A stretch of DNA of 64,000 nucleotides, from positions 124,001 through 188,000 of IMG/VR virus record IMGVR_UViG_3300017917_001342. One strand, written 5' to 3'. This document shows, in pieces, positions 1 through 39,225 of this stretch. Each line of letters begins with the position of its first letter. Positions within the stretch are counted from its first letter, which is position 1. Made by a program: the position numbers and the translations under genes. The notes below the pieces were generated by a model. It was not told the DNA's origin, did no database searches, and saw only the letters and a list, made by a program, of their open reading frames with translations.

Positions 1-76
1 GGCTTAAAGCAGCGGTTTGCTAAACCGTCGAGGGTCGAAAGGCCCTCCACTGGTTCGAATCCAGTACGCTCCGCCA
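1..76 (+). tRNA. tRNA-Ser(GCT), 5' end truncated by window edge
   Basis: anticodon arm CGGTT-TGCTAA-ACCG, long variable arm, GGTTCGAATCC T arm, CCA. Confidence 0.9.
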
Positions 77-314
77 ATAAAGTTGTCATTAACCGGTTGA
101 CACTGTAACCTAAACCATATAGTAATATGGCTGTAGCAAACGGAGAACTGCAATGGATATGGACTTTGAAGACTATCTGAACTATGTTCGTCAACTGCTT
201 GAGCAAGCCGAAGAAGACGGCTTTGAGATTGACGGATAACTGACACTCGGTACTGCTTGGCGGTTAAAGCAGCTAAGTCGCCTTTGTTCCTAGAGGTAGA
301 GCCACACACTTAAT

Positions 315-398
315 GGGTCGTACCCCGCAAGGTGCGGGAGCGGACTGTAACTCCGTCGGGGAAACCCACGCTTGGTTCGATTCCAAGACGACCCACCA
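315..398 (+). tRNA. tRNA-Tyr(GTA)
   Basis: GGGTCGT/ACGACCC acceptor, CTGTAAC loop, long variable arm, ACCA. Confidence 0.9.
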
Positions 399-486
399 AA
401 TACTAGGTAAGGCCCAAGGTTGGATACACGGTTGTGTGAAGGTTTGGGAGAAGCAGCAGAGCGAGAGGATGGGGCTGCGTGCTGTA

Positions 487-777
487 TTACTTTGCTTCTA
501 ATGTATCGAGACGATGCTCTAACACTGCAATGGCTTGTGAATTAGCTGCAATTAGTTCTTTGAGGTCAGCTCTAAGCTTTTCTCGTTCTAATTCGCTGTT
601 AACATTCATTGCCGGTTGATTGTCGTCTGTTACTACTACAGTGACTTTTGCTTTGAGATTGAGTATTTCTTCTTGCATGCTAATCATTGAGGATATAACG
701 TAGATAACACCCGATGTTAGCACTGGCAGAAATGCAAATACTACTTTTTCTAAAATACTACTCATGCTATGCTCCAA
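487..777 (-). CDS. membrane-anchored coiled-coil protein
   Basis: N-terminal hydrophobic helix then heptad-rich C-terminus; TAAATA motif just upstream on - strand. Confidence 0.55.
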   Translation of the reverse strand: MEHSMSSILEKVVFAFLPVLTSGVIYVISSMISMQEEILNLKAKVTVVVTDDNQPAMNVNSELEREKLRADLKELIAANSQAIAVLEHRLDTLEAK

Positions 778-801
778 ATTGCATACATATTTAAAGATTT
801 T

Positions 802-878
802 TGTCCCTTAGCTCAGGTGGTTAGAGCGAAGAGCTGATAACTCTTAGGTCGGTGGTTCGAGTCCACCAGGGACAACCA
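802..878 (+). tRNA. tRNA-Ile(GAT)
   Basis: cloverleaf, AGAG-CTGATAA-CTCT, ACCA. Confidence 0.92.
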
Positions 879-887
879 AACTAGGAG

Positions 888-1097
888 ATGTCAATGCCAC
901 AATTTAACTGTGATAGAGAATGGTGGTCTACTTTAACCAAAGAAGAACAAGATCACTGGCTTGATTTTGCAGAAAGTTGTGGTGCGCCTAGAGAACCGTT
1001 TTTAGTTGATCGCAATCCGGATTATCCAGATTTGGTTTGCATGCCCTGTGTTACTGTTGATATAGACGATGACGAATTAATAGAATTACTCCCGTAG
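888..1097 (+). CDS. small acidic hypothetical protein
   Basis: AGGAG RBS; 3' end overlaps the 5' end of tRNA-Glu. Confidence 0.5.
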   Translation: MSMPQFNCDREWWSTLTKEEQDHWLDFAESCGAPREPFLVDRNPDYPDLVCMPCVTVDIDDDELIELLP

Positions 1098-1165
1098 GAC
1101 TACTCGGTGATGGTCGCTGGCCTTTCAAGTCGGAGAAATGGGTTCGAAACCCATACGGGGGACCA
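1089..1165 (+). tRNA. tRNA-Glu(TTC)
   Basis: CTGGC-CTTTCAA-GTCGG, T arm TGGGTTCGAAACCCA, ACCA. Confidence 0.85.
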
Positions 1166-1177
1166 AAATTACTATGT

Positions 1178-1335
1178 GCCTGCGATGGCGAAATTGGAGA
1201 GACGCACCGGCAGGTGAGGCCGGCGGGCTCTAAGGAGTAGCAGTGAGCGAATGGGAGTAGGTCCGGAACGAAACCGCTAGCAATAGAATGCGAAAGTTAC
1301 CCCACATGTAGGTTCAAATCCTACTCGCAGCACCA
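1178..1335 (+). ncRNA. CCA-ended tRNA-like RNA with 84-nt variable region
   Basis: CTGCGA/TCGCAG acceptor, D-like arm, CCGGC/GCCGG stem, GTAGG-TTCAAAT-CCTAC, ACCA. Confidence 0.65.
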
Positions 1336-1361
1336 TTATTATTGTCGTGTAACCTCTGTAC

Positions 1362-1441
1362 GCTGTCGACATACGGGGGTATAGATAGGCTAGCGCAAGC
1401 CTGAAAGTGTATGTGGGTGCAACTCCTACCACGACAGCCAA
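1362..1441 (+). ncRNA. D-armless tRNA-like RNA (copy 1)
   Basis: GCTGTCG/CGACAGC stem, CATAC/GTATG arm, GTGGG-TGCAACT-CCTAC T-like arm. Confidence 0.5.
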
Positions 1442-1631
1442 ACAAAAGGTTCGAGAATGAATGAAGAATTATTAAAACAAGCAGAAATTGCATTGGGATC
1501 GTCATTCCGTCTTATGGAACAATATTACTTCTTAAAAAAACGCGGCTGGCATTGTTATTGGAATCTAGATACTGCTATTGCGCATGCAGCAAAAAATGTT
1601 AAATCATTGATTTGGTGTTAATACCAATCAT

Positions 1632-1707
1632 CCCTAGGTAGCTCAGTTGGTAGAGCACGTGCCTGAAGAGCATGGTGTCGGCGGTTCGATCCCGTCCCTA
1701 GGGGCCA
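1632..1707 (+). tRNA. tRNA-Phe(GAA)
   Basis: cloverleaf, CTGAAGA loop, CCA. Confidence 0.92.
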
Positions 1708-1746
1708 TTAGATCAAGTCTAGCTGATCTCGAAATAAGCTAGACCC

Positions 1747-1814
1747 GCTCCTGCAAGAGGATATACAGTTGTTCGAGCGACTGTATGTGGGATCGTTCCC
1801 CACCAGGAGTATCA
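1747..1814 (+). ncRNA. D-armless tRNA-like RNA (copy 2)
   Basis: GCTCCTG/CAGGAGT stem, 9-bp ATACAGTTG/CGACTGTAT arm, GTGGG-ATCGTTC-CCCAC. Confidence 0.5.
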
Positions 1815-1820
1815 AATATC

Positions 1821-1903
1821 GCGGGCGTGGTGGAATGGTAGACACAGGAGACTTAAAATCTCCCGCTTGATGCATGTCGGTTCGAGTCCGACCGCCCGCA
1901 CCA
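1821..1903 (+). tRNA. tRNA-Leu(TAA)
   Basis: GGAGA-CTTAAAA-TCTCC, long variable arm, ACCA. Confidence 0.93.
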
Positions 1904-1948
1904 AAATATAAGGTACGATAAATACTCACATAATTGGGAGTATTGGTT

Positions 1949-2452
1949 ATGCCTAGTAGAGAATTGCCGTGGATAGCAGAAGGTAAAACTGTTTTTGGTT
2001 TACACGAAACCAATAATAATCGACAACTTAGAGAGTGGCTTGTAAGTGATCGTAAAACACTAGGCGACCCCAAAGCGTTACCGTGGTGCGGCGATTACGT
2101 TGAAACTGCTATTAAGAAAAGTTTACCAAAAGAACCATTTACTGGTCCGCTTGCAGACAACCCATATTGGGCAAGAAACTGGATGAGTTTTGGTGTAGCT
2201 ACTAAACCTGTATATGGTGCAGTTGCAGTTTTCCAAAGAGAAGGCGGCGGCGGCCATGTTGGGTTTCTAGTAGGTGAAGATGCTACAGACTATTATGTAC
2301 TAGGTGGTAACCAGTCAAATGCTGTTAACATTAGCAGAATAGATAAAAAGCGTTGTTTAGGTACAAGATGGCCGAGCAGTTACAACAATCTTGGATTGAC
2401 ATTGCCTAGACTTTCTGCTACTAATATACCGAAAACAACAAACGAATTTTAA
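1949..2452 (+). CDS. TIGR02594-family NlpC/P60-like cell-wall hydrolase
   Basis: motifs LPWIAE, PWCGDYV, GGGHVGF, VLGGNQS. Confidence 0.8.
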   Translation: MPSRELPWIAEGKTVFGLHETNNNRQLREWLVSDRKTLGDPKALPWCGDYVETAIKKSLPKEPFTGPLADNPYWARNWMSFGVATKPVYGAVAVFQREGGGGHVGFLVGEDATDYYVLGGNQSNAVNISRIDKKRCLGTRWPSSYNNLGLTLPRLSATNIPKTTNEF

Positions 2453-2458
2453 GACTAT

Positions 2459-2533
2459 TGGGAGATAGTTCAGTGGTAGAACACGGGTTTTTGGTACCCG
2501 GTGTCGGGGGTTCGAGCCCTCCTCTCCCAGCCA
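2459..2533 (+). tRNA. tRNA-Gln(TTG)
   Basis: TGGGAGA/TCTCCCA, CGGGT-TTTTGGT-ACCCG, GCCA. Confidence 0.88.
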
Positions 2534-2540
2534 ATTATGT

Positions 2541-2617
2541 CAGGGTGTAGCTTAGCCTGGTAAAGTGCCGGACCTGGACTCCGGAGACCGTTGGTTCAAC
2601 TCCAACTACCCTGACCA
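2541..2617 (+). tRNA. tRNA-Pro(TGG), C at position 33
   Basis: CAGGGTG/TACCCTG, CCGGA-CCTGGAC-TCCGG, ACCA. Confidence 0.8.
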
Positions 2618-2625
2618 AACTATAT

Positions 2626-2702
2626 CTGGGTATAGCTCAGTCTGATAGAGTGCTGCACTCGGAATGCAGAGGCCGCTGGTTTGAATCCAGTTACCCAGAC
2701 CA
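2626..2702 (+). tRNA. tRNA-Pro(CGG)
   Basis: CTGCA-CTCGGAA-TGCAG, ACCA. Confidence 0.88.
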
Positions 2703-2707
2703 AACAC

Positions 2708-2715
2708 TATAAATA
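2708..2715 (+). promoter_or_regulatory. T4-like late promoter TATAAATA
   Basis: exact TATAAATA 5 nt before ATG at 2720; TAAATA recurs ahead of ORFs at 1917, 8664, 24561, 27118, 29966, 56802 and on - strand at 793 and 15743. Confidence 0.55.
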
Positions 2716-2719
2716 CTGT

Positions 2720-3022
2720 ATGCTTATAAGAGAAATACTTTCAGAACTAACATTCATGGGCAGTCCTTGCACAAAGGATTGCAGCGGACACAAAGCTGGC
2801 TATGAATGGGGCATACGTCACAAAGGCAGAACTGCTAAAAGTTGGAGCAACAGTTTCAACAACGGCACGGATATTGCTAAACAAAAAATTGCAATGCGTC
2901 CACAAGGTGGGGGTAAGCTGCCGGGTTATGTAAGCCAAACACCTAGTGCAGTCCGTAAACGTGCTCAACGAGCAGCTAGACCTGCTGTAGCACAGCCGCC
3001 GCAAGCACCTGTTGCAGAATAA
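2720..3022 (+). CDS. hypothetical phage protein (CTKDCSGHKAGYEW motif)
   Basis: ORF directly downstream of TATAAATA. Confidence 0.65.
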   Translation: MLIREILSELTFMGSPCTKDCSGHKAGYEWGIRHKGRTAKSWSNSFNNGTDIAKQKIAMRPQGGGKLPGYVSQTPSAVRKRAQRAARPAVAQPPQAPVAE

Positions 3023-3027
3023 ATTAT

Positions 3028-3116
3028 AGGCATCCGGCGACGATGGAGTGTCGTGCTGGTCTCCAAAACCAGTGTCTGTAAAGACTTAGCGAGTTCGAAT
3101 CTCGCGATGCCTGCCA
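3028..3116 (+). tRNA. tRNA-Trp(CCA) with long variable arm
   Basis: AGGCATC/GATGCCT, CTGGT-CTCCAAA-ACCAG, GCCA. Confidence 0.8.
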
Positions 3117-3161
3117 AAAAAGAACTTGTATTAAACGAGTTAAATAGTATACTTAAAAAGT

Positions 3162-3238
3162 CGGAGTGTAGCTCAGTTTGGTAGAGCGCCTGGTTTGGGA
3201 CCAGGATGTCGTGGGTTCAAATCCTGCCACTCCGACCA
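3162..3238 (+). tRNA. tRNA-Pro(TGG)
   Basis: CGGAGTG/CACTCCG, CCTGG-TTTGGGA-CCAGG. Confidence 0.93.
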
Positions 3239-3263
3239 TTTTATTTTGTACTGTGGGGCAATA

Positions 3264-3410
3264 ATGTGTAAGTCTAGTATAGAATACGCAGAATTAGCAG
3301 GTATCAACATATCTGCGTCAAATCTTTCAGCAAAAAAAGACTTGACAAAAGACGAAGAAACTGTTTTAACTTGGCTTACAAAACGTGCAGAATATTTGAA
3401 AAAACTATAG
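3264..3410 (+). CDS. small hypothetical protein
   Basis: fills spacer between tRNAs; ATG at 3264. Confidence 0.45.
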   Translation: MCKSSIEYAELAGINISASNLSAKKDLTKDEETVLTWLTKRAEYLKKL

Positions 3411-3414
3411 TTAC

Positions 3415-3491
3415 GCCTTCGTAGCTCAGTGGACTAGAGCGGTGCGCTTCGAACGCATTGGCCGGGGGTTCGAATCCCTCCGAGGGCTCCA
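3415..3491 (+). tRNA. tRNA-Arg(TCG)
   Basis: GTGCG-CTTCGAA-CGCAT, TCCA. Confidence 0.9.
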
Positions 3492-3556
3492 TTTTAACCT
3501 GTGAACACTGTGTTCACCCTGTATCAGTAAGCAGGCGCGGTATGTGAGAGGACAAT

Positions 3557-3817
3557 ATGAAAACACCCGATGAAAAACAAAAATTCTACGAAACATGCAG
3601 TGCAATATTGAACATTGCACATGAATATAATACTCCTGTAAGACGTAGAACAAGATGGAATACAAGACGACTTGGTAACGGTAGATATCCGGGCTTTGGA
3701 CTAATTCAATGCTTTGGCAGTACTGTGCGAGTTGTTAGTAAACAAGGTACGCGAATGTTCAAAACCTACGAAGAAGTTTATGAATATTTGCATAAAACTA
3801 TTAACATTATAGAATAA
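3557..3817 (+). CDS. hypothetical protein
   Basis: GAGG RBS, 86 aa. Confidence 0.6.
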   Translation: MKTPDEKQKFYETCSAILNIAHEYNTPVRRRTRWNTRRLGNGRYPGFGLIQCFGSTVRVVSKQGTRMFKTYEEVYEYLHKTINIIE

Positions 3818-3819
3818 AT

Positions 3820-3893
3820 GGCTGCGTGATGAAATGGTATCATACCGGATTGTCTATCCGAGGTCGTGGGTTCGATTCCCATCGCGGTCGCCA
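3820..3893 (+). tRNA. tRNA-Asp(GTC)
   Basis: CGGA-TTGTCTA-TCCG, GCCA. Confidence 0.88.
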
Positions 3894-3900
3894 ATTTTTA

Positions 3901-3990
3901 GGATAGATGGCCGAGAGGCTTAAGGCGTTGCTCTCGAAAAGCAAAGGCGGGTAACACCGTCCGTGAGTTCGAATCTCACTCTATCCGCCA
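3901..3990 (+). tRNA. tRNA-Ser(CGA)
   Basis: TTGCT-CTCGAAA-AGCAA, long variable arm, GCCA. Confidence 0.92.
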
Positions 3991-4001
3991 TAGTGAATTT
4001 T

Positions 4002-4400: not shown

Positions 4401-5177
4401 ATGCAGGATACCAAGATGTCGTCTAACCTTTATATAGATAAATTCAAAAAAACCGTTTTAAATCCAAATATAGTTTGGGACACTGATGAAAATACTGACA
4501 TGTGGGTGTTAGATGTGTTTGGATTTGATCGAACTGGTACTTTTATCGATGCAGGTGCAGCCGGAAGAAGCAACAGTTACAACTTAGAAACACACTTTAA
4601 CTGGTCCGGTATTTGTTTAGAACCACACGAAAAATCCTATAAAGAACTAGTCGAATCTGGTAGAAAATTAGTATTAAACAAATGTCTATACGGATACAGC
4701 GGTGAAGTTGAATTCTATGAGTGCAATGGTATTGTACCCGGTAAAACTAACAAAAATGGTGGCGATTGGGTGTCTGATCAATTAAGCTGCATACCGCAAC
4801 ATATTATGCCATGGCATGAAAACGATGTAAAATCAACTGGTAAACTGGTTAGAAAAACTGCTGTTACAATTAGCGAATTACTAGCTACCTATAACATTCA
4901 AACACCTATAGAACTGTTATTGATGGACATCGAAGGGTCTGAAGAATCTGTAATAGAAACGTTACCGTTCGATAGTTGTGTATTTTTGTCAATGGTAATA
5001 GAAAACGGTTTACGATTTGCTGAGTTGCTGTATAATAACAATTACTATATGGTAGAAAATCCCTATAGAGAAAAACCCTACTACGATTATTACTTTTTAC
5101 ACGAGTCGATGATACAACAGTATCCACATAAAATTTACTCGTTAAGTGACATAATAAACATGCGAAATACAAATTAA
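4401..5177 (+). CDS. FkbM-family SAM-dependent methyltransferase
   Basis: FIDAGA motif I, NWSGICLEP, LLMDIEGSE. Confidence 0.75.
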   Translation: MQDTKMSSNLYIDKFKKTVLNPNIVWDTDENTDMWVLDVFGFDRTGTFIDAGAAGRSNSYNLETHFNWSGICLEPHEKSYKELVESGRKLVLNKCLYGYSGEVEFYECNGIVPGKTNKNGGDWVSDQLSCIPQHIMPWHENDVKSTGKLVRKTAVTISELLATYNIQTPIELLLMDIEGSEESVIETLPFDSCVFLSMVIENGLRFAELLYNNNYYMVENPYREKPYYDYYFLHESMIQQYPHKIYSLSDIINMRNTN

Positions 5178-5348: not shown

Positions 5349-5422
5349 GCGGGTATCGTATAAAGGTATTACATCTGCTTGCCAAGCAGAAGAAATGGGA
5401 TCGTTCCCCATTACCCGCTCCA
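5349..5422 (+). tRNA. tRNA-Gly(GCC)
   Basis: TCTGC-TTGCCAA-GCAGA, TCCA. Confidence 0.88.
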
Positions 5423-5518: not shown

Positions 5519-5593
5519 GGGTTTGTAGCTCAACGGTAGAGCAGGTGTCTCTAAAACATCGAGGTGTGGGTTCGAATCCCATCTTACCCGCCA
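5519..5593 (+). tRNA. amber suppressor tRNA (CTA)
   Basis: GGTGT-CTCTAAA-ACATC; acceptor has two U.U mismatches; GCCA. Confidence 0.8.
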
Positions 5594-6581: not shown

Positions 6582-6664
6582 GATACACTTGTGGGCACCC
6601 AAGCGTCTTAGTGCGGTATCTGCGGATTGAAAGGGGAGACGGTTCAAATCCGTCGAAGTGTATC
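6582..6664 (+). ncRNA. tRNA-like core on an extended stem, no CCA
   Basis: GATACACTT/AAGTGTATC closing stem; GACGG-TTCAAAT-CCGTC T arm. Confidence 0.45.
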
Positions 6665-6694
6665 TTAACAACAATTTGCAACAACAGGTGCAAC

Positions 6695-7530: not shown

Positions 7531-7612
7531 GCTCACGTATCCCCCTCCGCTACGAACGGAGAGTCAGGTAATTGGATGGAAGATGGGGGTTCGAGTCCCT
7601 CCGTGAGTACCA
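7531..7612 (+). tRNA. atypical D-armless tRNA-Arg(ACG)
   Basis: GCTCACG/CGTGAGT, CTCCG-CTACGAA-CGGAG directly after a 7-nt linker, 23-nt variable region, T arm, ACCA. Confidence 0.7.
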
Positions 7613-11072: not shown

Positions 11073-12017
11073 ATGGCTAGTTTACTAGACCCTGCAATAT
11101 TGTTTTTTATATTTGGTATTTTTGCGGGTTTGATTAAATCAAATCTAGCCATACCAGAACAGATTTCTAAATTTCTATCACTGTATTTGCTAATGGCATT
11201 AGGCCTTAAAGGTGGTTTTGCATTAGCTGCAAATGGCTTTACAGGCGAAATTGCATCGGTAATAGCAATAGGTTTACTATTAGCATTTGCTGTACCTATA
11301 TTAGGATATGCTGTGCTACGAACCAAATTAAATGGTTTTGACGCCGCAGCAGTTGCAGCAACTTACGGTTCAGTAAGTGCCGTCACATTTGTTACTGCAA
11401 CTCAATACTTGTCTATGGTTAACGTAGAATATGGCAGTTACATGGCAGCAGTAATGGCACTGATGGAATCACCTGCTATCATCATGGCTGTGGCATTAGC
11501 AGCGTATATCAGAGCAAGTAAGAGCGTTAGCATTAAACATGTATTGCACGAAAGCTTTACAGATGGTGCTCACATATTGCTGTTAGCAGCATTGGCTATT
11601 GGTTTTGTAACAGGTGCTAGTGGCGAAACAGTAATGAAACCATTTGTTGGTGACCTATTCAAAGGGCTGTTGGCATTCTTCCTGTTAGACATGGGACTAC
11701 AAGTTGCCAAGCGCATACCAGAACTTAGAGATAAAAGCATTGCATTGATAGTATATGCTGTTGCGTCTCCTATAGTTCATAGTATACTTGCATTAACACT
11801 GGCAGTGCTGTTTGGTGTATCTGTAGGCAACGCAATACTGTTAATGGTACTTGCTGCTAGTGCAAGTTACATTGCAGTACCAGCCGTATTAAAATTTGCC
11901 ATACCAGAAGCTAACCCTAGTGTTTACTTTGGATTGAGTTTAGGTATTACGTTCCCCTTTAACGTGCTAATAGGTATACCGTTGTATCATTGGCTAGCAT
12001 CATTAGTGATTGGATAA
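11073..12017 (+). CDS. sbtA: sodium-dependent bicarbonate transport family permease
   Basis: LLDPAILFF...SLYLLMALGLKGG, AATYGSVSAVTF, ASASYIAVPA. Confidence 0.85.
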   Translation: MASLLDPAILFFIFGIFAGLIKSNLAIPEQISKFLSLYLLMALGLKGGFALAANGFTGEIASVIAIGLLLAFAVPILGYAVLRTKLNGFDAAAVAATYGSVSAVTFVTATQYLSMVNVEYGSYMAAVMALMESPAIIMAVALAAYIRASKSVSIKHVLHESFTDGAHILLLAALAIGFVTGASGETVMKPFVGDLFKGLLAFFLLDMGLQVAKRIPELRDKSIALIVYAVASPIVHSILALTLAVLFGVSVGNAILLMVLAASASYIAVPAVLKFAIPEANPSVYFGLSLGITFPFNVLIGIPLYHWLASLVIG

Positions 12018-16469: not shown

Positions 16470-16575
16470 CTAACAGTTGCGGTTGGGGCACAAGTGGTTG
16501 GCCTGAATCCATAAAACTCCTTGGGTGATGCCTGTCGGGAGCAAGCTGAGTTCGAATCTCAGACGCAACTGTTAG
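16470..16575 (+). ncRNA. tRNA-like core on a 12-bp stem, no CCA
   Basis: CTAACAGTTGCG/CGCAACTGTTAG; CTGAG-TTCGAAT-CTCAG. Confidence 0.55.
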
Positions 16576-17650: not shown

Positions 17651-18153
17651 GCCTGCTAGTCAAGAGTAGAAAAGCAATGAGACTAGTAGGTCCTTAGCGG
17701 GATAAACAAAGTAACCTGTGGCGCAGTGCTTGCGAGCATGGATGAAACGTAAGTGTTTAGACTATAACTGATATGCATCTCCTCCTTCCCCGCTAGCTAG
17801 GACGGGTTGGTTGTAGATCTGATGCTGATCGAATGGTTCGAATCCTGGGAGAGCACTGCATATCAGTTTAAATTCTGTTTTCACATGTACTATGTTCTGG
17901 GAACACTTTAACCAGGGTTAGAGTGCTGGGTTCGATTCCCGGGCGGGTTAAATGGGGGTTCGAGTCCCTCAGTAGTACAGTTGAAAGCAGAATTTGCAAT
18001 TCGGTTTCTACCTGCATTAGACAGTGTAAAGGTGCATATACTTTGGGCGAACGTAGTAAGATAGGATGAAGTACAAGTCCCGTATCTGCTAGTAGTTTTT
18101 GGACAAGGTGGGGCCAGTTCGAATCTGGCACTGATGCAGTTAGAAACAGAATT
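17651..18153 (+). ncRNA. ~500-nt structured RNA with several T-loop hairpins
   Basis: long stems at 17766/17857, 17871/17988, 17998/18141; GGTTCGA hairpins at 17926, 17954, 18113. Confidence 0.5.
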
Positions 18154-26923: not shown

Positions 26924-26998
26924 GTCGCGTTAGCAAAACGTTAATGCGCTGCCCCGCAAAGGTAGAGGACTGTGGTTAAATTCCCAGACGCGACTCCA
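26924..26998 (+). tRNA. tRNA-Cys(GCA), divergent
   Basis: GTCGCGT/ACGCGAC-TCCA, CTGCC-CCGCAAA-GGTAG; D loop lacks GG. Confidence 0.7.
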
Positions 26999-29039: not shown

Positions 29040-29920
29040 CACGATATTAACGTTGTGAAACGTGGATGTTGTGTTTACGCATTGGGGGTTTAGCCTCAAC
29101 AGGATAAGTGCAGTGATGCACCCAAAGCTAGAAAGCCTACATACTAGCGCCAGCAGTGGTCCATCTAAACAAGCCTGAACTAGACTTGACTCGGGTTAAA
29201 CCGAAAGCAAGTCCCGTCCGTAGAAAGGCGGTAGGCAGTAAGTTAGGAATAGTGTCCGAAAGGATAGTTGCAGAGCCAGTCGGTGAGCGATAAGAGGGTT
29301 GGCGCCCAAACACTGTTCAGCCAAACTAACGAATGCTGAAAGTTAACAGGTAGGTACAGAGTCTGAGCCCGCAAGCAAAGGCATGGTACCATTTCGAGAG
29401 TGGAAGGGTTAGGCCCCGGATACTTGAAGAAACACTGATTAGTCCGCAAGACGAAAGGTATGAGGTGTGCTGTATTGGGTATGTCAAAAGCATATTCAGC
29501 AGCCGAGGTAGCACATCTCGGATAGGTTGCAAAATCAGCTAATGGTAAGCTAATTCCCTTCTAAGGAATCGATTGCAGGTTCAACTCCTGTTTTTGAAAA
29601 ATGCAAAGTCTACCTCGGTATGTAGTGTAAGGTGTCAAATACTTGAGGCGCAAGCCAATCAAGTTCAACAAAGCTCGCAAGGCAGCGTTGATTTGTGCTA
29701 GAAGTTTCGTAGCCCGCAAGGCTTAATGGTCCGCAAGATCAACGGAAAACAAGGTGCAGAATAGCTACATACGACGAGTCTACTGCCTGACTCTAAAAAC
29801 GGCGACACTGTTAATGGACTAGGTTACCGCAAGGGACTTAGTGGATGTCGGAAGAAAGCGGCTCGCAAGGCTGGCAATAATGTCCGAAGCGTTAACATCG
29901 AACGTGTAATCTCAGCGTTT
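29040..29920 (+). ncRNA. GOLLD-like large ncRNA (5' boundary uncertain)
   Basis: ~0.9 kb without credible ORF, at least 9 GCAA/GAAA-capped hairpins, GGTAGGTAC..GAGTCTGAG, GAGGTAGCACATCTC and terminal GTAATCTCAG blocks recalled from GOLLD; tRNA-cluster context. Confidence 0.6.
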
Positions 29921-38965: not shown

Positions 38966-39225
38966 CTGTTGCATTTTTAACTGCACTGTGCTATAGTGAG
39001 TTATTGATTATGCGAAAAAAGGTTCGTAGTAGCGGCTAGTAATCCAGGAACCTTGCGGCAAATAAGGTGAGAACGCCCGCCTCACACACCAGCAATGGTA
39101 AAGTAGCGAAAGCGAAGAGATGTAGGAATCTTGTCTATATGGCAAGTTGAAAACAGGGACCCTACTATTTGCCAATACCCATTAAGATCGTCTGTAGGCT
39201 AGCCAAATTTTTAAAAAGGTGTGTT

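What the first reader, a model, noticed from the sequence alone, without database searches (positions are those of the whole stretch)
1362..1814. Two paralogous minimal tRNA-like RNAs lacking a D arm (1362-1441, 1747-1814)
Each has a 7-bp acceptor-like stem, one arm bounded by ATAC...GTAT, and then directly GTGGG-[T-like loop]-CCYAC. The junction GTATGTGGG is identical in both. The 3' ends are CAAA and ATCA instead of CCA. Two independent copies with different stems argue for a real small family.
Basis: seen in the sequence. Interest (0 to 1): 0.62.

Follow-up and report, generated by a model that had tools for sequence, protein, structure and literature searches.

The report
Two unrelated tRNA-like genes, one conserved
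Inside the transfer-RNA gene array of a 519-kb phage, one of the two flagged elements belongs to a small, previously undescribed family of tRNA-shaped RNAs whose folding is conserved across other large-phage contigs, and the other is a lone, oddly built tRNA-like gene; they are not copies of each other.

Summary
The window lies in the tRNA array of a 518,643-bp phage genome with terminal repeats (46 ARAGORN tRNAs, all on the + strand). Both flagged sequences exist, but the reading needs correction.

Candidate 2 (1747-1814) is real. It is the 3' part of a ~110-nt element (1708-1817) with six homologues in phage and metagenome contigs. The element has:
- a 5' hairpin;
- a tRNA-like three-way junction with a 7-bp acceptor stem (G1·U72);
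- a 9-nt linker with a conserved GG and no D stem;
- a 9-bp arm capped by the hexaloop UUCGAG;
- a T arm;
- a 3' tail A-U/A-C-A, never a clean NCCA.

Of 34 proposed pairs, 16 show compensatory changes. The hexaloop is exactly complementary to the 5' hairpin loop, with one compensatory change. No Rfam family matches.

Candidate 1 is better read as 1343-1440: a 98-nt, four-armed tRNA-like gene. It has a perfect acceptor stem flush with the T arm, a G-CCA end, a 9-bp hairpin at the D position and a 6-nt anticodon-type loop. No homologue was found.

The two are not detectable paralogues, and the shared GTATGTGGG junction is common in phage tRNAs. Function is untested; a non-decoding tRNA mimic made by tRNA-processing enzymes is my best guess.

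The parts
1708..1817 (+). Whole conserved element containing candidate 2: a 5' hairpin plus a tRNA-like three-way junction. It sits between tRNA-Phe (1632-1707) and tRNA-Leu (1821-1903).
   Evidence: Seven-member alignment A5 and model R3. The seven members score 100-132 bits; the next-best hits are ordinary tRNAs at 30 bits or less.
1717..1744 (+). 5' hairpin P0 (GTCTAGC / GCTAGAC stem). In six of seven members it closes further to a 7-nt loop, CUCGAAA.
   Evidence: Four of its 7 pairs show compensatory changes. RNAalifold predicts the hairpin independently.
1728..1733 (+). CTCGAA in the P0 loop, proposed to pair with the hexaloop at 1772-1777 as a kissing interaction.
   Evidence: Exact reverse complement of the hexaloop. 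97.6% of cells are paired across the family. L158 carries CUUGAA together with UUCAAG, a compensatory change.
1747..1753 (+). Acceptor-like stem, 5' strand. It pairs with 1804-1810. G1·U72 wobble in 6 of 7 members.
   Evidence: 100% of cells paired; 4 of 7 pairs show compensatory changes.
1754..1762 (+). Unpaired linker CAAGAGGAT in place of a D arm. CAA..GG.T is conserved, and the GG resembles the G18G19 of a D loop.
   Evidence: Invariant columns in A5. An ordinary phage tRNA with the same T arm has the D loop CAAGUGGUAAGG. The elbow contact with the T loop is inferred, not tested.
1763..1786 (+). Arm P2: a 9-bp stem (1763-1771 / 1778-1786) with hexaloop TTCGAG (1772-1777), at the position of the anticodon arm.
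   Evidence: Seven of 9 pairs show compensatory changes. The loop is 6 nt in six of the seven members (7 nt in L158), so it is not a normal anticodon loop.
1787..1803 (+). T arm GTGGG ATCGTTC CCCAC.
   Evidence: Identical in all seven members. It served as the search anchor for L158, L230, L231 and L236. L148 and L152 were also recovered by a pattern that does not include it. The same T loop occurs in tRNA-Gly at 5349-5422.
1804..1814 (+). Acceptor 3' strand CAGGAGT plus the tail ATCA (no encoded CCA).
   Evidence: Tails across the family are ATCA, AACA, ATCG, AACA, ATAC, ATCC and ATCA. All 51 ARAGORN tRNAs on the + strand of this genome encode NCCA.
1343..1440 (+). Candidate 1, re-delimited: a 98-nt four-armed tRNA-like gene.
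- Acceptor stem 1343-1349 / 1430-1436.
- 9-bp hairpin at the D position, 1352-1380.
- Anticodon-type arm 1386-1403 with the 6-nt loop AGCGCA (1392-1397).
- T arm 1413-1429 (GTGGG TGCAACT CCTAC).
- G1437 followed by CCA at 1438-1440.
   Evidence: The minimum-energy and centroid folds give this cloverleaf. It is one of 48 hits to the strict tRNA grammar, against 0.63 expected. It starts 7 nt after the preceding CCA at 1333-1335. No homologue was found.
1362..1368 (+). It pairs with 1432-1438, which competes with the 1343-1349 pairing.
Evidence: The sequence permits both pairings.

Best explanation
The finding covers two separate, non-paralogous tRNA-derived genes. Both are co-oriented with the tRNA array of a 519-kb phage and packed into it.

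**Candidate 2** is the 3' two-thirds of a conserved ~110-nt structured RNA (1708-1817).
- The tRNA-like body keeps the parts that tRNA-processing enzymes read: a 7-bp acceptor stem, a T arm, and a linker GG that could make the elbow contact with the T loop.
- It has no D stem.
- Its 9-bp arm is as long as the stacked D and anticodon stems of a tRNA.
- That arm ends in a 6-nt loop that cannot decode. Instead the loop is exactly complementary to the loop of the hairpin just upstream.

Most likely mechanism (inferred, not shown):
1. The element is transcribed with its neighbouring tRNAs.
2. It is recognised as a tRNA by RNase P and by a 3' end-maker. RNase Z or exonucleases are plausible because no CCA is encoded.
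3. CCA may then be added by the host enzyme or by one of the phage's two PF01743-family (PolyA_pol) nucleotidyltransferases.
4. It persists as an L-shaped, anticodon-less tRNA mimic whose distal loop is capped by the loop-loop contact.

It would then act as a ligand or decoy for a tRNA-binding protein, or as a processing handle that releases or positions the 5' hairpin.

**Candidate 1** (1343-1440) is an orphan tRNA-like gene. It has intact processing signals (acceptor stem, T arm, GCCA) but a remodelled D region and a 6-nt loop. It is either a second non-decoding tRNA mimic or a tRNA gene in decay.
For: Context:
- The window is G000:124001-188000 of a 518,643-bp virus record with terminal repeats.
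- 46 tRNAs are called, all on the + strand, together with GOLLD and skipping-rope RNAs.
- No + strand terminator-like site lies in 1-4000.

Candidate 2, the fold itself:
- Fold z-score is -4.3 alone and -4.4 with the 5' hairpin.
- G·U pairs (G1·U72 in 6 of 7 members, and U·G pairs in P0) fix the strand as +.

Candidate 2, homologues:
- L152, L148 and L158 came from a T-arm 17-mer scan.
- L148 and L152 were recovered again by a pattern built only from the hairpin loop and the linker.
- L230, L231 and L236 came from metagenome contigs.
- All sit inside tRNA arrays on the tRNA strand, but with different neighbours: Phe|Leu, Ile|Tyr, Tyr|Tyr-like, ORF|Tyr, and Trp-like|Asn three times.

Candidate 2, covariation on A5:
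- 97.5% of cells are paired.
- 16 of 34 pairs show changes on both sides, against 0-4 when the partners are slid by 1-3 columns.
- 0 of 500 shuffles reach the observed covariation score.
- RNAalifold finds the same four helices without being given my structure.
- The loop-loop pairing is 6 of 6 complementary, with one compensatory change.

Candidate 2, separation from ordinary tRNAs:
- The family model separates members (100-132 bits) from tRNAs (30 bits or less).
- The tail is never a clean NCCA, although all 51 + strand tRNAs of this genome encode NCCA.
- The genome carries two PF01743-family (PolyA_pol) ORFs.

Candidate 1:
- It fits the strict tRNA grammar (48 observed, 0.63 expected), with the normal 7-nt spacing and a cloverleaf fold.

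No paralogy.
Against: - No expression or end-mapping data.
- The family has only seven sequences, several of them close to each other. Four were found through the T arm, so T-arm conservation is partly circular.
- The kissing contact rests on a single compensatory event. I did not test whether the hairpin can geometrically reach the end of the 9-bp arm in an L-shaped fold.
- In the window's own copy the inner part of the 5' hairpin does not close to the 7-nt loop seen in the other six members.
- Candidate 1 has an unremarkable fold energy (z = -0.89) and no homologue, so no covariation test is possible.
- Nothing distinguishes a decoy role from a processing role or some other role.
Confidence: 0.75

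Rival explanations
1. Candidate 1 alone is a decaying tRNA gene: a pseudogene that still looks processable and has no function of its own.
For: - No homologue in the genome, in 44 related or large viral records, in GenBank phages, or in two exact-word scans of IMG/VR.
- Fold z-score only -0.89.
- The 6-nt loop lacks U33.
- An imperfect direct repeat, TGTCGTGTAAC (1343) against TGTCGACATAC (1364), suggests the 5' end was duplicated, turning a 77-nt tRNA into a 98-nt one (inference).
Against: - All four stems are intact. The acceptor stem is 7 of 7 Watson-Crick, and the 9-bp hairpin has no mismatch.
- GCCA and the 7-nt spacing are kept.
- Random decay should damage stems as often as loops.
Confidence: 0.4
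2. One reading: two paralogous members of one small family of minimal, D-armless tRNA-like RNAs with non-CCA ends.
For: - A shared exact 9-mer, GTATGTGGG, at the junction before a T-type hairpin, present only at these two places in the window.
- Both have 6-nt loops with a central CG in ARAGORN's relaxed models.
Against: - The models do not cross-hit at E<=10.
- Their alignment score is lower than either scores against ordinary tRNAs.
- Candidate 1 has a hairpin at the D position and a GCCA end.
- The junction is widespread in phage tRNAs.
- T loops, 3' T strands and overall architecture differ.
Confidence: 0.05
3. The candidate 2 family is a cis-acting processing or punctuation element of the polycistronic tRNA transcript. 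The tRNA-like body exists only to recruit RNase P or RNase Z, and the product that matters is the released 5' hairpin or the correct maturation of neighbouring tRNAs.
For: - It always lies 3-5 nt after the CCA of an upstream tRNA and 6-10 nt before the next tRNA.
- It has no encoded CCA.
- The 5' hairpin loop is conserved.
- From my own knowledge, tRNA-like handles are used this way in MALAT1/mascRNA and in the murine gammaherpesvirus tRNA-miRNA units.
Against: - Ordinary tRNAs in the same arrays are matured without such an element.
- The strong conservation of the 9-bp arm length, the hexaloop and the linker GG goes beyond what a cleavage signal needs.
- The loop-loop complementarity ties the hairpin to the body rather than releasing it.
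Confidence: 0.25
4. Candidate 2 is a working, aminoacylated decoder tRNA of unusual shape, comparable to D-armless mitochondrial tRNAs.
For: - ARAGORN's mitochondrial mode calls it as a D-replacement-loop tRNA.
- Other elements in these arrays that lack a normal D hairpin keep proper 7-nt anticodon loops, for example ACG at 7531-7612 and UAU/CAU in a 78-nt family.
Against: - The loop is 6 nt in 6 of 7 members and is conserved as a complement of the upstream hairpin, not as an anticodon.
- There is no variable region and no encoded CCA.
Confidence: 0.04
5. Chance stems, or a DNA-level signal such as a recombination or protein-binding site, rather than RNA.
For: - The bare descriptor is frequent by chance.
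- The element contains two GATC sites and a TCGA site.
Against: - Compensatory changes in three helices, conserved G·U pairs that would be A·C on the other strand, and seven independent contexts argue against this for candidate 2.
- Candidate 1 meets a grammar with 0.63 chance hits per genome strand.
Confidence: 0.03

Closest known systems
Phage T4 RNA C and RNA D (species 1 and species 2 RNAs)
   Same: - Small stable RNAs encoded inside a phage tRNA gene cluster, on the tRNA strand, directly after a tRNA.
- Their roles are still unknown (annotation; PMC3014915 and PMC9697503).
- T4 rnaC folds with a canonical T-type hairpin next to its 3' end.
   Different: - No sequence or structure homology: the family model R3 finds nothing in the T4 region at E<=10.
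- The T4 RNAs are 139 and 119 nt with different architectures.
- No loop-loop complementarity of the kind seen here was examined or is known to me.
Canonical tRNA (Rfam RF00005)
   Same: - 7-bp acceptor stem, 5-bp T stem with a 7-nt loop flush against the acceptor stem, a discriminator base, and array spacing.
- The T loops TGCAACT and ATCGTTC also occur in bona fide phage tRNAs.
   Different: - No RF00005 hit for either element, even at E<=10.
- 6-nt loops in place of the anticodon loop.
- Candidate 2 has no D stem, no variable region and no CCA.
- Candidate 1 has a 9-bp hairpin with an 11-nt loop at the D position.
D-armless mitochondrial tRNAs (nematode type)
   Same: Candidate 2 has an acceptor stem, a short unpaired replacement for the D arm, one long arm and a T arm. 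ARAGORN's mitochondrial mode reports it as a D-replacement-loop tRNA.
   Different: - Mitochondrial forms keep a 7-nt anticodon loop and decode.
- Here the loop is 6 nt and is complementary to an upstream hairpin.
- The setting is a phage genome, and a 5' hairpin is part of the element.
tRNA-like domain of tmRNA
   Same: From my own knowledge: an acceptor stem plus T arm, a D region reduced to a loop with no stem, and a long helix where the anticodon arm would be.
   Different: - ARAGORN's tmRNA search finds none in the window.
- There is no G3·U70 pair (position 3:70 is U-A or C-G).
- There is no coding region or pseudoknot ring.
- The arm is a closed 9-bp hairpin.
tRNA-like processing handles (mascRNA of MALAT1; gammaherpesvirus tRNA-miRNA units)
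   Same: From my own knowledge: non-decoding tRNA look-alikes joined to another structured RNA, recognised by RNase P or RNase Z, and given CCA after transcription.
   Different: - Those are eukaryotic or herpesviral.
- In them the partner hairpins are not complementary to the tRNA-like loop.
- No homology was tested or is expected.

Membership tests
Canonical tRNA (RF00005) | Scores above the family threshold of the tRNA covariance model | tested here: not met
   No RF00005 match over 1343-1440 or 1747-1814, even at E<=10, while neighbouring tRNAs score 40-68 bits.
Canonical tRNA (RF00005) | 7-nt anticodon loop with U33 | tested here: not met
   Candidate 1 has the loop AGCGCA (6 nt). Candidate 2 has TTCGAG (6 nt), conserved in the family.
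Canonical tRNA (RF00005) | D stem-loop of 3-4 bp with G18G19 in the loop | tested here: not met
   Candidate 2 has no D stem, only a 9-nt linker with a conserved GG. Candidate 1 has a 9-bp stem and an 11-nt loop without GG.
Canonical tRNA (RF00005) | 7-bp acceptor stem flush with a 5-bp/7-nt T arm, then a discriminator and (in this genome) an encoded CCA | tested here: inconclusive
   Met by candidate 1 at 1343-1440. Candidate 2 meets the stems but carries ATCA in place of NCCA, as do its relatives.
D-armless (mitochondrial-type) tRNA | D-replacement loop with otherwise decodable anticodon arm | tested here: not met
   ARAGORN -mt calls 1747-1811 as a D-replacement-loop tRNA, but with a two-base 'anticodon' in a 6-nt loop. 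Candidate 1 is not called in that mode.
tmRNA tRNA-like domain | Detected as tmRNA; G3·U70 alanine identity pair | tested here: not met
   No tmRNA in the window. Pair 3:70 is U-A or C-G across the family.
T4 RNA C / RNA D | Detectable sequence or structure similarity to T4 rnaC or rnaD | tested here: not met
   Model R3 finds nothing in T4 69500-74500 at E<=10. The resemblance is one of genomic setting only.
Any Rfam 15 family | A match at or near a family's gathering score | tested here: not met
   The window scan at gathering thresholds and the 1-2000 scan at E<=10 give nothing over either element.
New family proposed here (5' hairpin plus D-stem-less tRNA-like body) | Four helices kept by compensatory change, a conserved linker GG, hexaloop complementary to the hairpin loop, and a non-CCA tail | tested here: met
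   Candidate 2 scores 127.5 bits against the seven-member model. Covariation is shown. Candidate 1 does not match the model.
New family proposed here | Transcribed and processed into a discrete RNA | not testable with these tools

The most novel reading that the evidence does not exclude
The candidate 2 family is a phage-made, anticodon-less tRNA mimic. An anticodon-loop-like 5' hairpin (CUCGAAA; CUUGAAA in one member) docks on a codon-like hexaloop at the tip of the tRNA body. This would present a self-contained imitation of a tRNA engaged with its codon. It would act as a decoy or inhibitor for a host tRNA-targeting defence nuclease, or for a tRNA-processing or modifying enzyme, during infection by very large phages.
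Probability: 0.2. Interest if true: 0.85.

Novelty: new variant of a known kind. Interest (0 to 1): 0.62.

Why it matters
Very large phages carry dozens of tRNA genes, and why they do so is still debated. Standard tRNA finders see only the canonical ones.

This window shows that the arrays also hold tRNA-shaped genes that cannot decode. At least one of them (1708-1817) is kept by selection on its structure across different phage contigs, and it is absent from Rfam.

A conserved tRNA body without an anticodon, tied by a loop-loop contact to its own 5' hairpin, is a concrete and cheap target for biochemistry: RNase P, RNase Z and CCA-enzyme assays, chemical probing, and pull-downs.

It also bears on two open questions: what the long-known T4 RNAs C and D are for, and whether phages use tRNA look-alikes against tRNA-directed host defences.

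In practical terms, counts of phage 'tRNAs' miss a class of related genes. In this genome three elements fit the strict tRNA-gene grammar but are not called by ARAGORN.

Tried and rejected
**Searches that led nowhere**
- Rfam over the window at gathering thresholds and over 1-2000 at E<=10: nothing over either element.
- GenBank phages by blastn:
  - 1100-2000 matched only through tRNA-Leu;
  - 1708-1816 gave no match;
  - 1336-1445 gave no match.
- Synteny through neighbouring proteins:
  - The CHAP-domain protein at 1949-2452 gave 16 loci.
  - The 54-aa ORF at 1457-1621 gave 3 loci.
  - In the CHAP loci, blastn and nhmmer found no copy of either element. In the records behind both sets, the single-sequence models R1 and R2 and the family model R3 found none.
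- Single-sequence models R1 and R2 against 41 viral records returned only weak hits. For R1 these were to tRNA-like elements I had pre-selected by a shared 16-nt motif, so I discounted them as biased.
- Exact-word scans for candidate 1:
  - The T-arm 17-mer hit only unrelated tRNAs and a coding family.
  - The anticodon-arm 18-mer had 0 hits.
- Scans for more members of the candidate 2 family:
  - The hairpin-loop plus linker pattern added only chance hits beyond L148 and L152.
  - The U-variant of that pattern added only L158 plus coding families.
  - The 19-mer in species-representative bacterial and archaeal genomes gave 5 unrelated hits.

**Structural ideas rejected or not pursued**
- An alternative helix AGATCA/TGATCT upstream of the 5' hairpin breaks whenever it varies, so I rejected it.
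- A 4-bp loop-loop match in candidate 1 (AGCG with CGCU) has a chance probability of roughly 0.1 by my own estimate, so I make no claim from it.
- Derivation of candidate 2 from the genome's tRNA-Gly, which has the same T loop: there is no similarity beyond the T loop.

**Other negatives**
- RtcB is not encoded in the genome.
- The supplement of the 2023 catalogue of viral candidate structured RNAs is not held. I could not check whether the family is already listed there.
- Promoter-like sites in 1-4000 are at chance level.
Full report
**Setting.** The window is positions 124001-188000 of a 518,643-bp viral record with direct terminal repeats, that is, a very large phage. ARAGORN finds 46 tRNA genes in the window, all on the + strand between 315 and 40763. 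Rfam adds one more tRNA, a GOLLD RNA and a skipping-rope RNA. Across the genome, all 51 + strand tRNAs called by ARAGORN encode NCCA, and adjacent genes are often only 6-8 nt apart. No GenBank phage is close: a 900-nt query around the finding matched only through tRNA-Leu.

**Checking the observation.** The bare pattern is weak evidence, however. A 7-bp stem that closes 55-100 nt and abuts a 5-bp/7-nt hairpin occurs about 80 times per 518-kb strand in shuffled sequence. Neither element matches any Rfam family, even at E<=10. Default ARAGORN misses both. Its mitochondrial mode calls candidate 2 as a D-replacement-loop tRNA with a 6-nt loop, and a relaxed threshold calls both.

**Candidate 1 re-delimited.**
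- TGTCGTG (1343-1349) pairs perfectly with CACGACA (1430-1436). This is flush with the T hairpin (1413-1429) and is followed by G1437 and CCA at 1438-1440.
- The new start lies 7 nt after the CCA (1333-1335) of the preceding element, which is the normal spacing in this array.
- Without constraints, 1343-1440 folds into a four-armed cloverleaf. It has the acceptor stem, a 9-bp hairpin with an 11-nt loop at the D position, a 6-bp arm with the 6-nt loop AGCGCA, a 9-nt variable stretch and the T arm.
- A strict tRNA-gene grammar (7-bp acceptor with at most one G·U, flush T hairpin, discriminator plus CCA) has 48 hits on the + strand, 2 on the - strand, and a mean of 0.63 in 30 shuffles. Forty-five of the 48 are ARAGORN tRNAs. 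The other three are 1343-1440, 7531-7612 and an element 4.3 kb upstream of the window.

So candidate 1 is a gene-like unit of the array. It is not minimal, it does not lack a D-position hairpin, and it ends in GCCA.

Its fold energy is unremarkable (z = -0.89). I found no relative in any of these searches:
- the genome itself;
- 44 viral records;
- GenBank phages;
- two exact-word scans of IMG/VR.

Its T loop, TGCAACT, occurs in ordinary phage tRNAs, so that feature is not degenerate.

**Candidate 2 is a member of a conserved family.** A scan of IMG/VR for its T-arm 17-mer returned three loci whose flanks align with it (L152, L148, L158). A second pattern, built only from the upstream hairpin loop and the linker, recovered L148 and L152 again. 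A metagenome scan added L230, L231 and L236. The conserved unit is about 110 nt (window 1708-1817) and consists of:
- a 5' hairpin, followed by 2-3 nt;
- a 7-bp acceptor-like stem with G1·U72 in 6 of 7 members;
- the linker CAAGNGGNU;
- a 9-bp arm with the hexaloop UUCGAG;
- the T arm GUGGG AUCGUUC CCCAC;
- a tail A-U/A-C-A.

Covariation on the seven-row alignment is strong.
- 97.5% of cells are paired.
- 16 of 34 pairs change on both sides: 4 in the 5' hairpin, 4 in the acceptor stem, 7 of 9 in the long arm and 1 in the loop-loop contact.
- Sliding the partners by 1-3 columns leaves 0-4 such pairs, and no shuffle of 500 reaches the observed score.
- RNAalifold predicts the same four helices on its own.
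- The conserved G·U pairs fix the strand.

A model built from the seven sequences scores its members at 100-132 bits. Everything else in 49 viral records scores 30 bits or less, and those weaker hits are ordinary tRNAs that share the T arm. The family is not in GenBank phages. By exact word, it is not in species-representative bacterial or archaeal genomes either.

**The loop-loop contact.** CUCGAA in the 5' hairpin loop (1728-1733) is the exact reverse complement of the hexaloop UUCGAG (1772-1777). In L158 the hairpin reads CUUGAA and the distal loop UUCAAG, a compensatory change. Across the family 97.6% of these cells pair.

In six of seven members the 5' hairpin closes further to a 7-nt loop, CUCGAAA, which has the outline of an anticodon loop. 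The window's own copy does not close this inner part.

This contact rests on one compensatory event plus a complementarity that I estimate at about 0.002 by chance. I regard it as likely but not proven. A rival upstream helix (AGATCA/TGATCT) breaks whenever it varies, so I rejected it.

**Genomic grammar.** Every member lies in a tRNA array on the tRNA strand, 3-5 nt after the CCA of an upstream tRNA where there is one, and 6-10 nt before the next tRNA. The neighbours differ: Phe|Leu here, then Ile|Tyr, Tyr|Tyr-like, ORF|Tyr, and Trp-like|Asn three times. The element therefore behaves as a cassette of its own. No + strand terminator-like site lies in 1-4000, which is compatible with co-transcription.

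**Are the two elements paralogues?** No evidence supports this.
- Each single-sequence model finds only itself in the genome at E<=10.
- The family model does not touch 1343-1440.
- The global alignment score between the two (6-7) is below what either scores against ordinary tRNAs of the genome (13-14.5). Ordinary tRNAs score a median of 34 against their best partner.
- The shared junction occurs in 72 IMG/VR loci, mostly tRNAs or tRNA-like elements.

**How it most likely works.**

Shown:
- Candidate 2 is a structure-conserved RNA.
- It keeps the acceptor stem, the T arm and a linker GG.
- It lacks a D stem, a usable anticodon loop and an encoded CCA.

Inferred:
- The linker GG plays the part of G18G19 against U55 and C56 of the T loop. 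An ordinary phage tRNA with the same T arm has the D loop CAAGUGGUAAGG.
- The 9-bp arm stands in for the stacked D and anticodon stems, so the body can take an L shape.
- RNase P and a 3' end-maker process it, and CCA is added afterwards. The genome encodes two PF01743-family (PolyA_pol) nucleotidyltransferases.

My committed reading is a non-decoding tRNA mimic that serves as a ligand or decoy for a tRNA-binding protein. I give that specific role about 0.3. A processing-handle role gets about 0.25. The remainder is open.

For candidate 1, I put a second mimic and a decaying tRNA gene at roughly even odds.

**Comparison with what is known.** The closest analogue in setting is T4 RNA C and RNA D. 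These are small stable RNAs at the end of the T4 tRNA cluster whose roles remain unknown. They are not homologous to this family. The resemblances to D-armless mitochondrial tRNAs, to the tRNA-like domain of tmRNA, and to mascRNA-type handles are architectural only. The defining features of each were tested and not met, or rest on my own knowledge (see the membership table). A 2023 catalogue lists about 10,000 candidate structured RNAs in viruses, some of them tRNA-like (PMC10690425). Its supplement is not held, so prior listing cannot be excluded.

**Limits.**
- No alternative genetic code was used.

Noticed in passing
window 1180-1335: A tRNA-like element of about 156 nt, called by neither ARAGORN nor Rfam. 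It has a class-II-type D region, a 5-bp stem with the 7-nt loop AGGUGAG, an insertion of about 80 nt where the variable arm would be, a canonical T arm (GTAGG TTCAAAT CCTAC), and an acceptor stem with a C1xC72 mismatch ending in A-CCA.
   Followed up: partly
window 7531-7612; L091:3319-3406; L092:1062-1149: A tRNA-Arg(ACG)-like gene with a proper 7-nt loop (CUACGAA), a canonical T arm and an ACCA end, but no local D hairpin. The 5' D-side strand pairs with the region after the anticodon arm instead. A homologue with changed stems lies in related contigs. ARAGORN and Rfam call neither.
   Followed up: partly
L025, L028, L029, L040, L048, L063, L064, L066, L074, L087, L088 (matches listed): A recurrent element of about 78 nt in many phage contigs, several longer than 200 kb. 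It has an acceptor stem, UA, a short strand, an anticodon arm with UAU (CAU in one), a 3-4-bp helix closed after the anticodon arm with covarying sequence (CGU/ACG, CCC/GGG, CUCA/UGAG), UAAUUGGUGUAU, and a canonical T arm. It looks like an isoleucine decoder with a rearranged D region.
   Followed up: partly
G000:119680-119754 (4.3 kb upstream of the window): A 75-nt element that fits the strict tRNA grammar and ends in ACCA. It has the T loop CGCAAUA and a loop reading UUCUAAA. ARAGORN does not call it.
   Followed up: no
window 29462-29918 and 39057-39173: A full-length GOLLD RNA (234 bits) that encloses tRNA-Arg at 29527-29600, and a skipping-rope RNA (46.9 bits), both inside the tRNA array.
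   Followed up: no
window 5519-5593: A tRNA with anticodon CUA, which would read the amber codon. ARAGORN labels it Pyl. I did not test whether the phage reassigns TAG, and I used no alternative genetic code.
   Followed up: no
window 6584-6666, 11073-11156, 16475-16574, 17887-17982, 26924-26995: Further stretches on the tRNA strand with an acceptor-type stem next to a T-type hairpin, several with canonical TTCGA/TTCAA loops. ARAGORN misses all of them. The last is called by Rfam at 46.6 bits.
   Followed up: no
G000:307125-307493 (-) and G000:398809-399171 (+): Two ORFs (403 and 278 aa) with the PolyA_pol nucleotidyltransferase domain (PF01743), the family that includes CCA-adding enzymes. 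No RtcB was found.
   Followed up: partly
L152:1359-1447: Another non-canonical tRNA-like gene in a relative's array. It has a 6-nt loop (UUGCAG) in a 5-bp stem, a long variable arm and a canonical T arm. ARAGORN reports it with a two-base anticodon.
   Followed up: no
L152:~1850-1890 and L093:~3310-3350: A conserved spacer hairpin between tRNAs (CAGATCCRGCUG...UUUCYGGCUG) with an apparent compensatory change (A/U against G/C). This suggests that other small structured elements sit in these arrays.
   Followed up: no
window 1949-2452 and 4401-5177: Protein genes embedded in the tRNA array: a 167-aa protein with a weak CHAP-domain match (25 bits, just under the cut-off) that has 16 relatives in viral contigs, and an FkbM-type methyltransferase.
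   Followed up: partly
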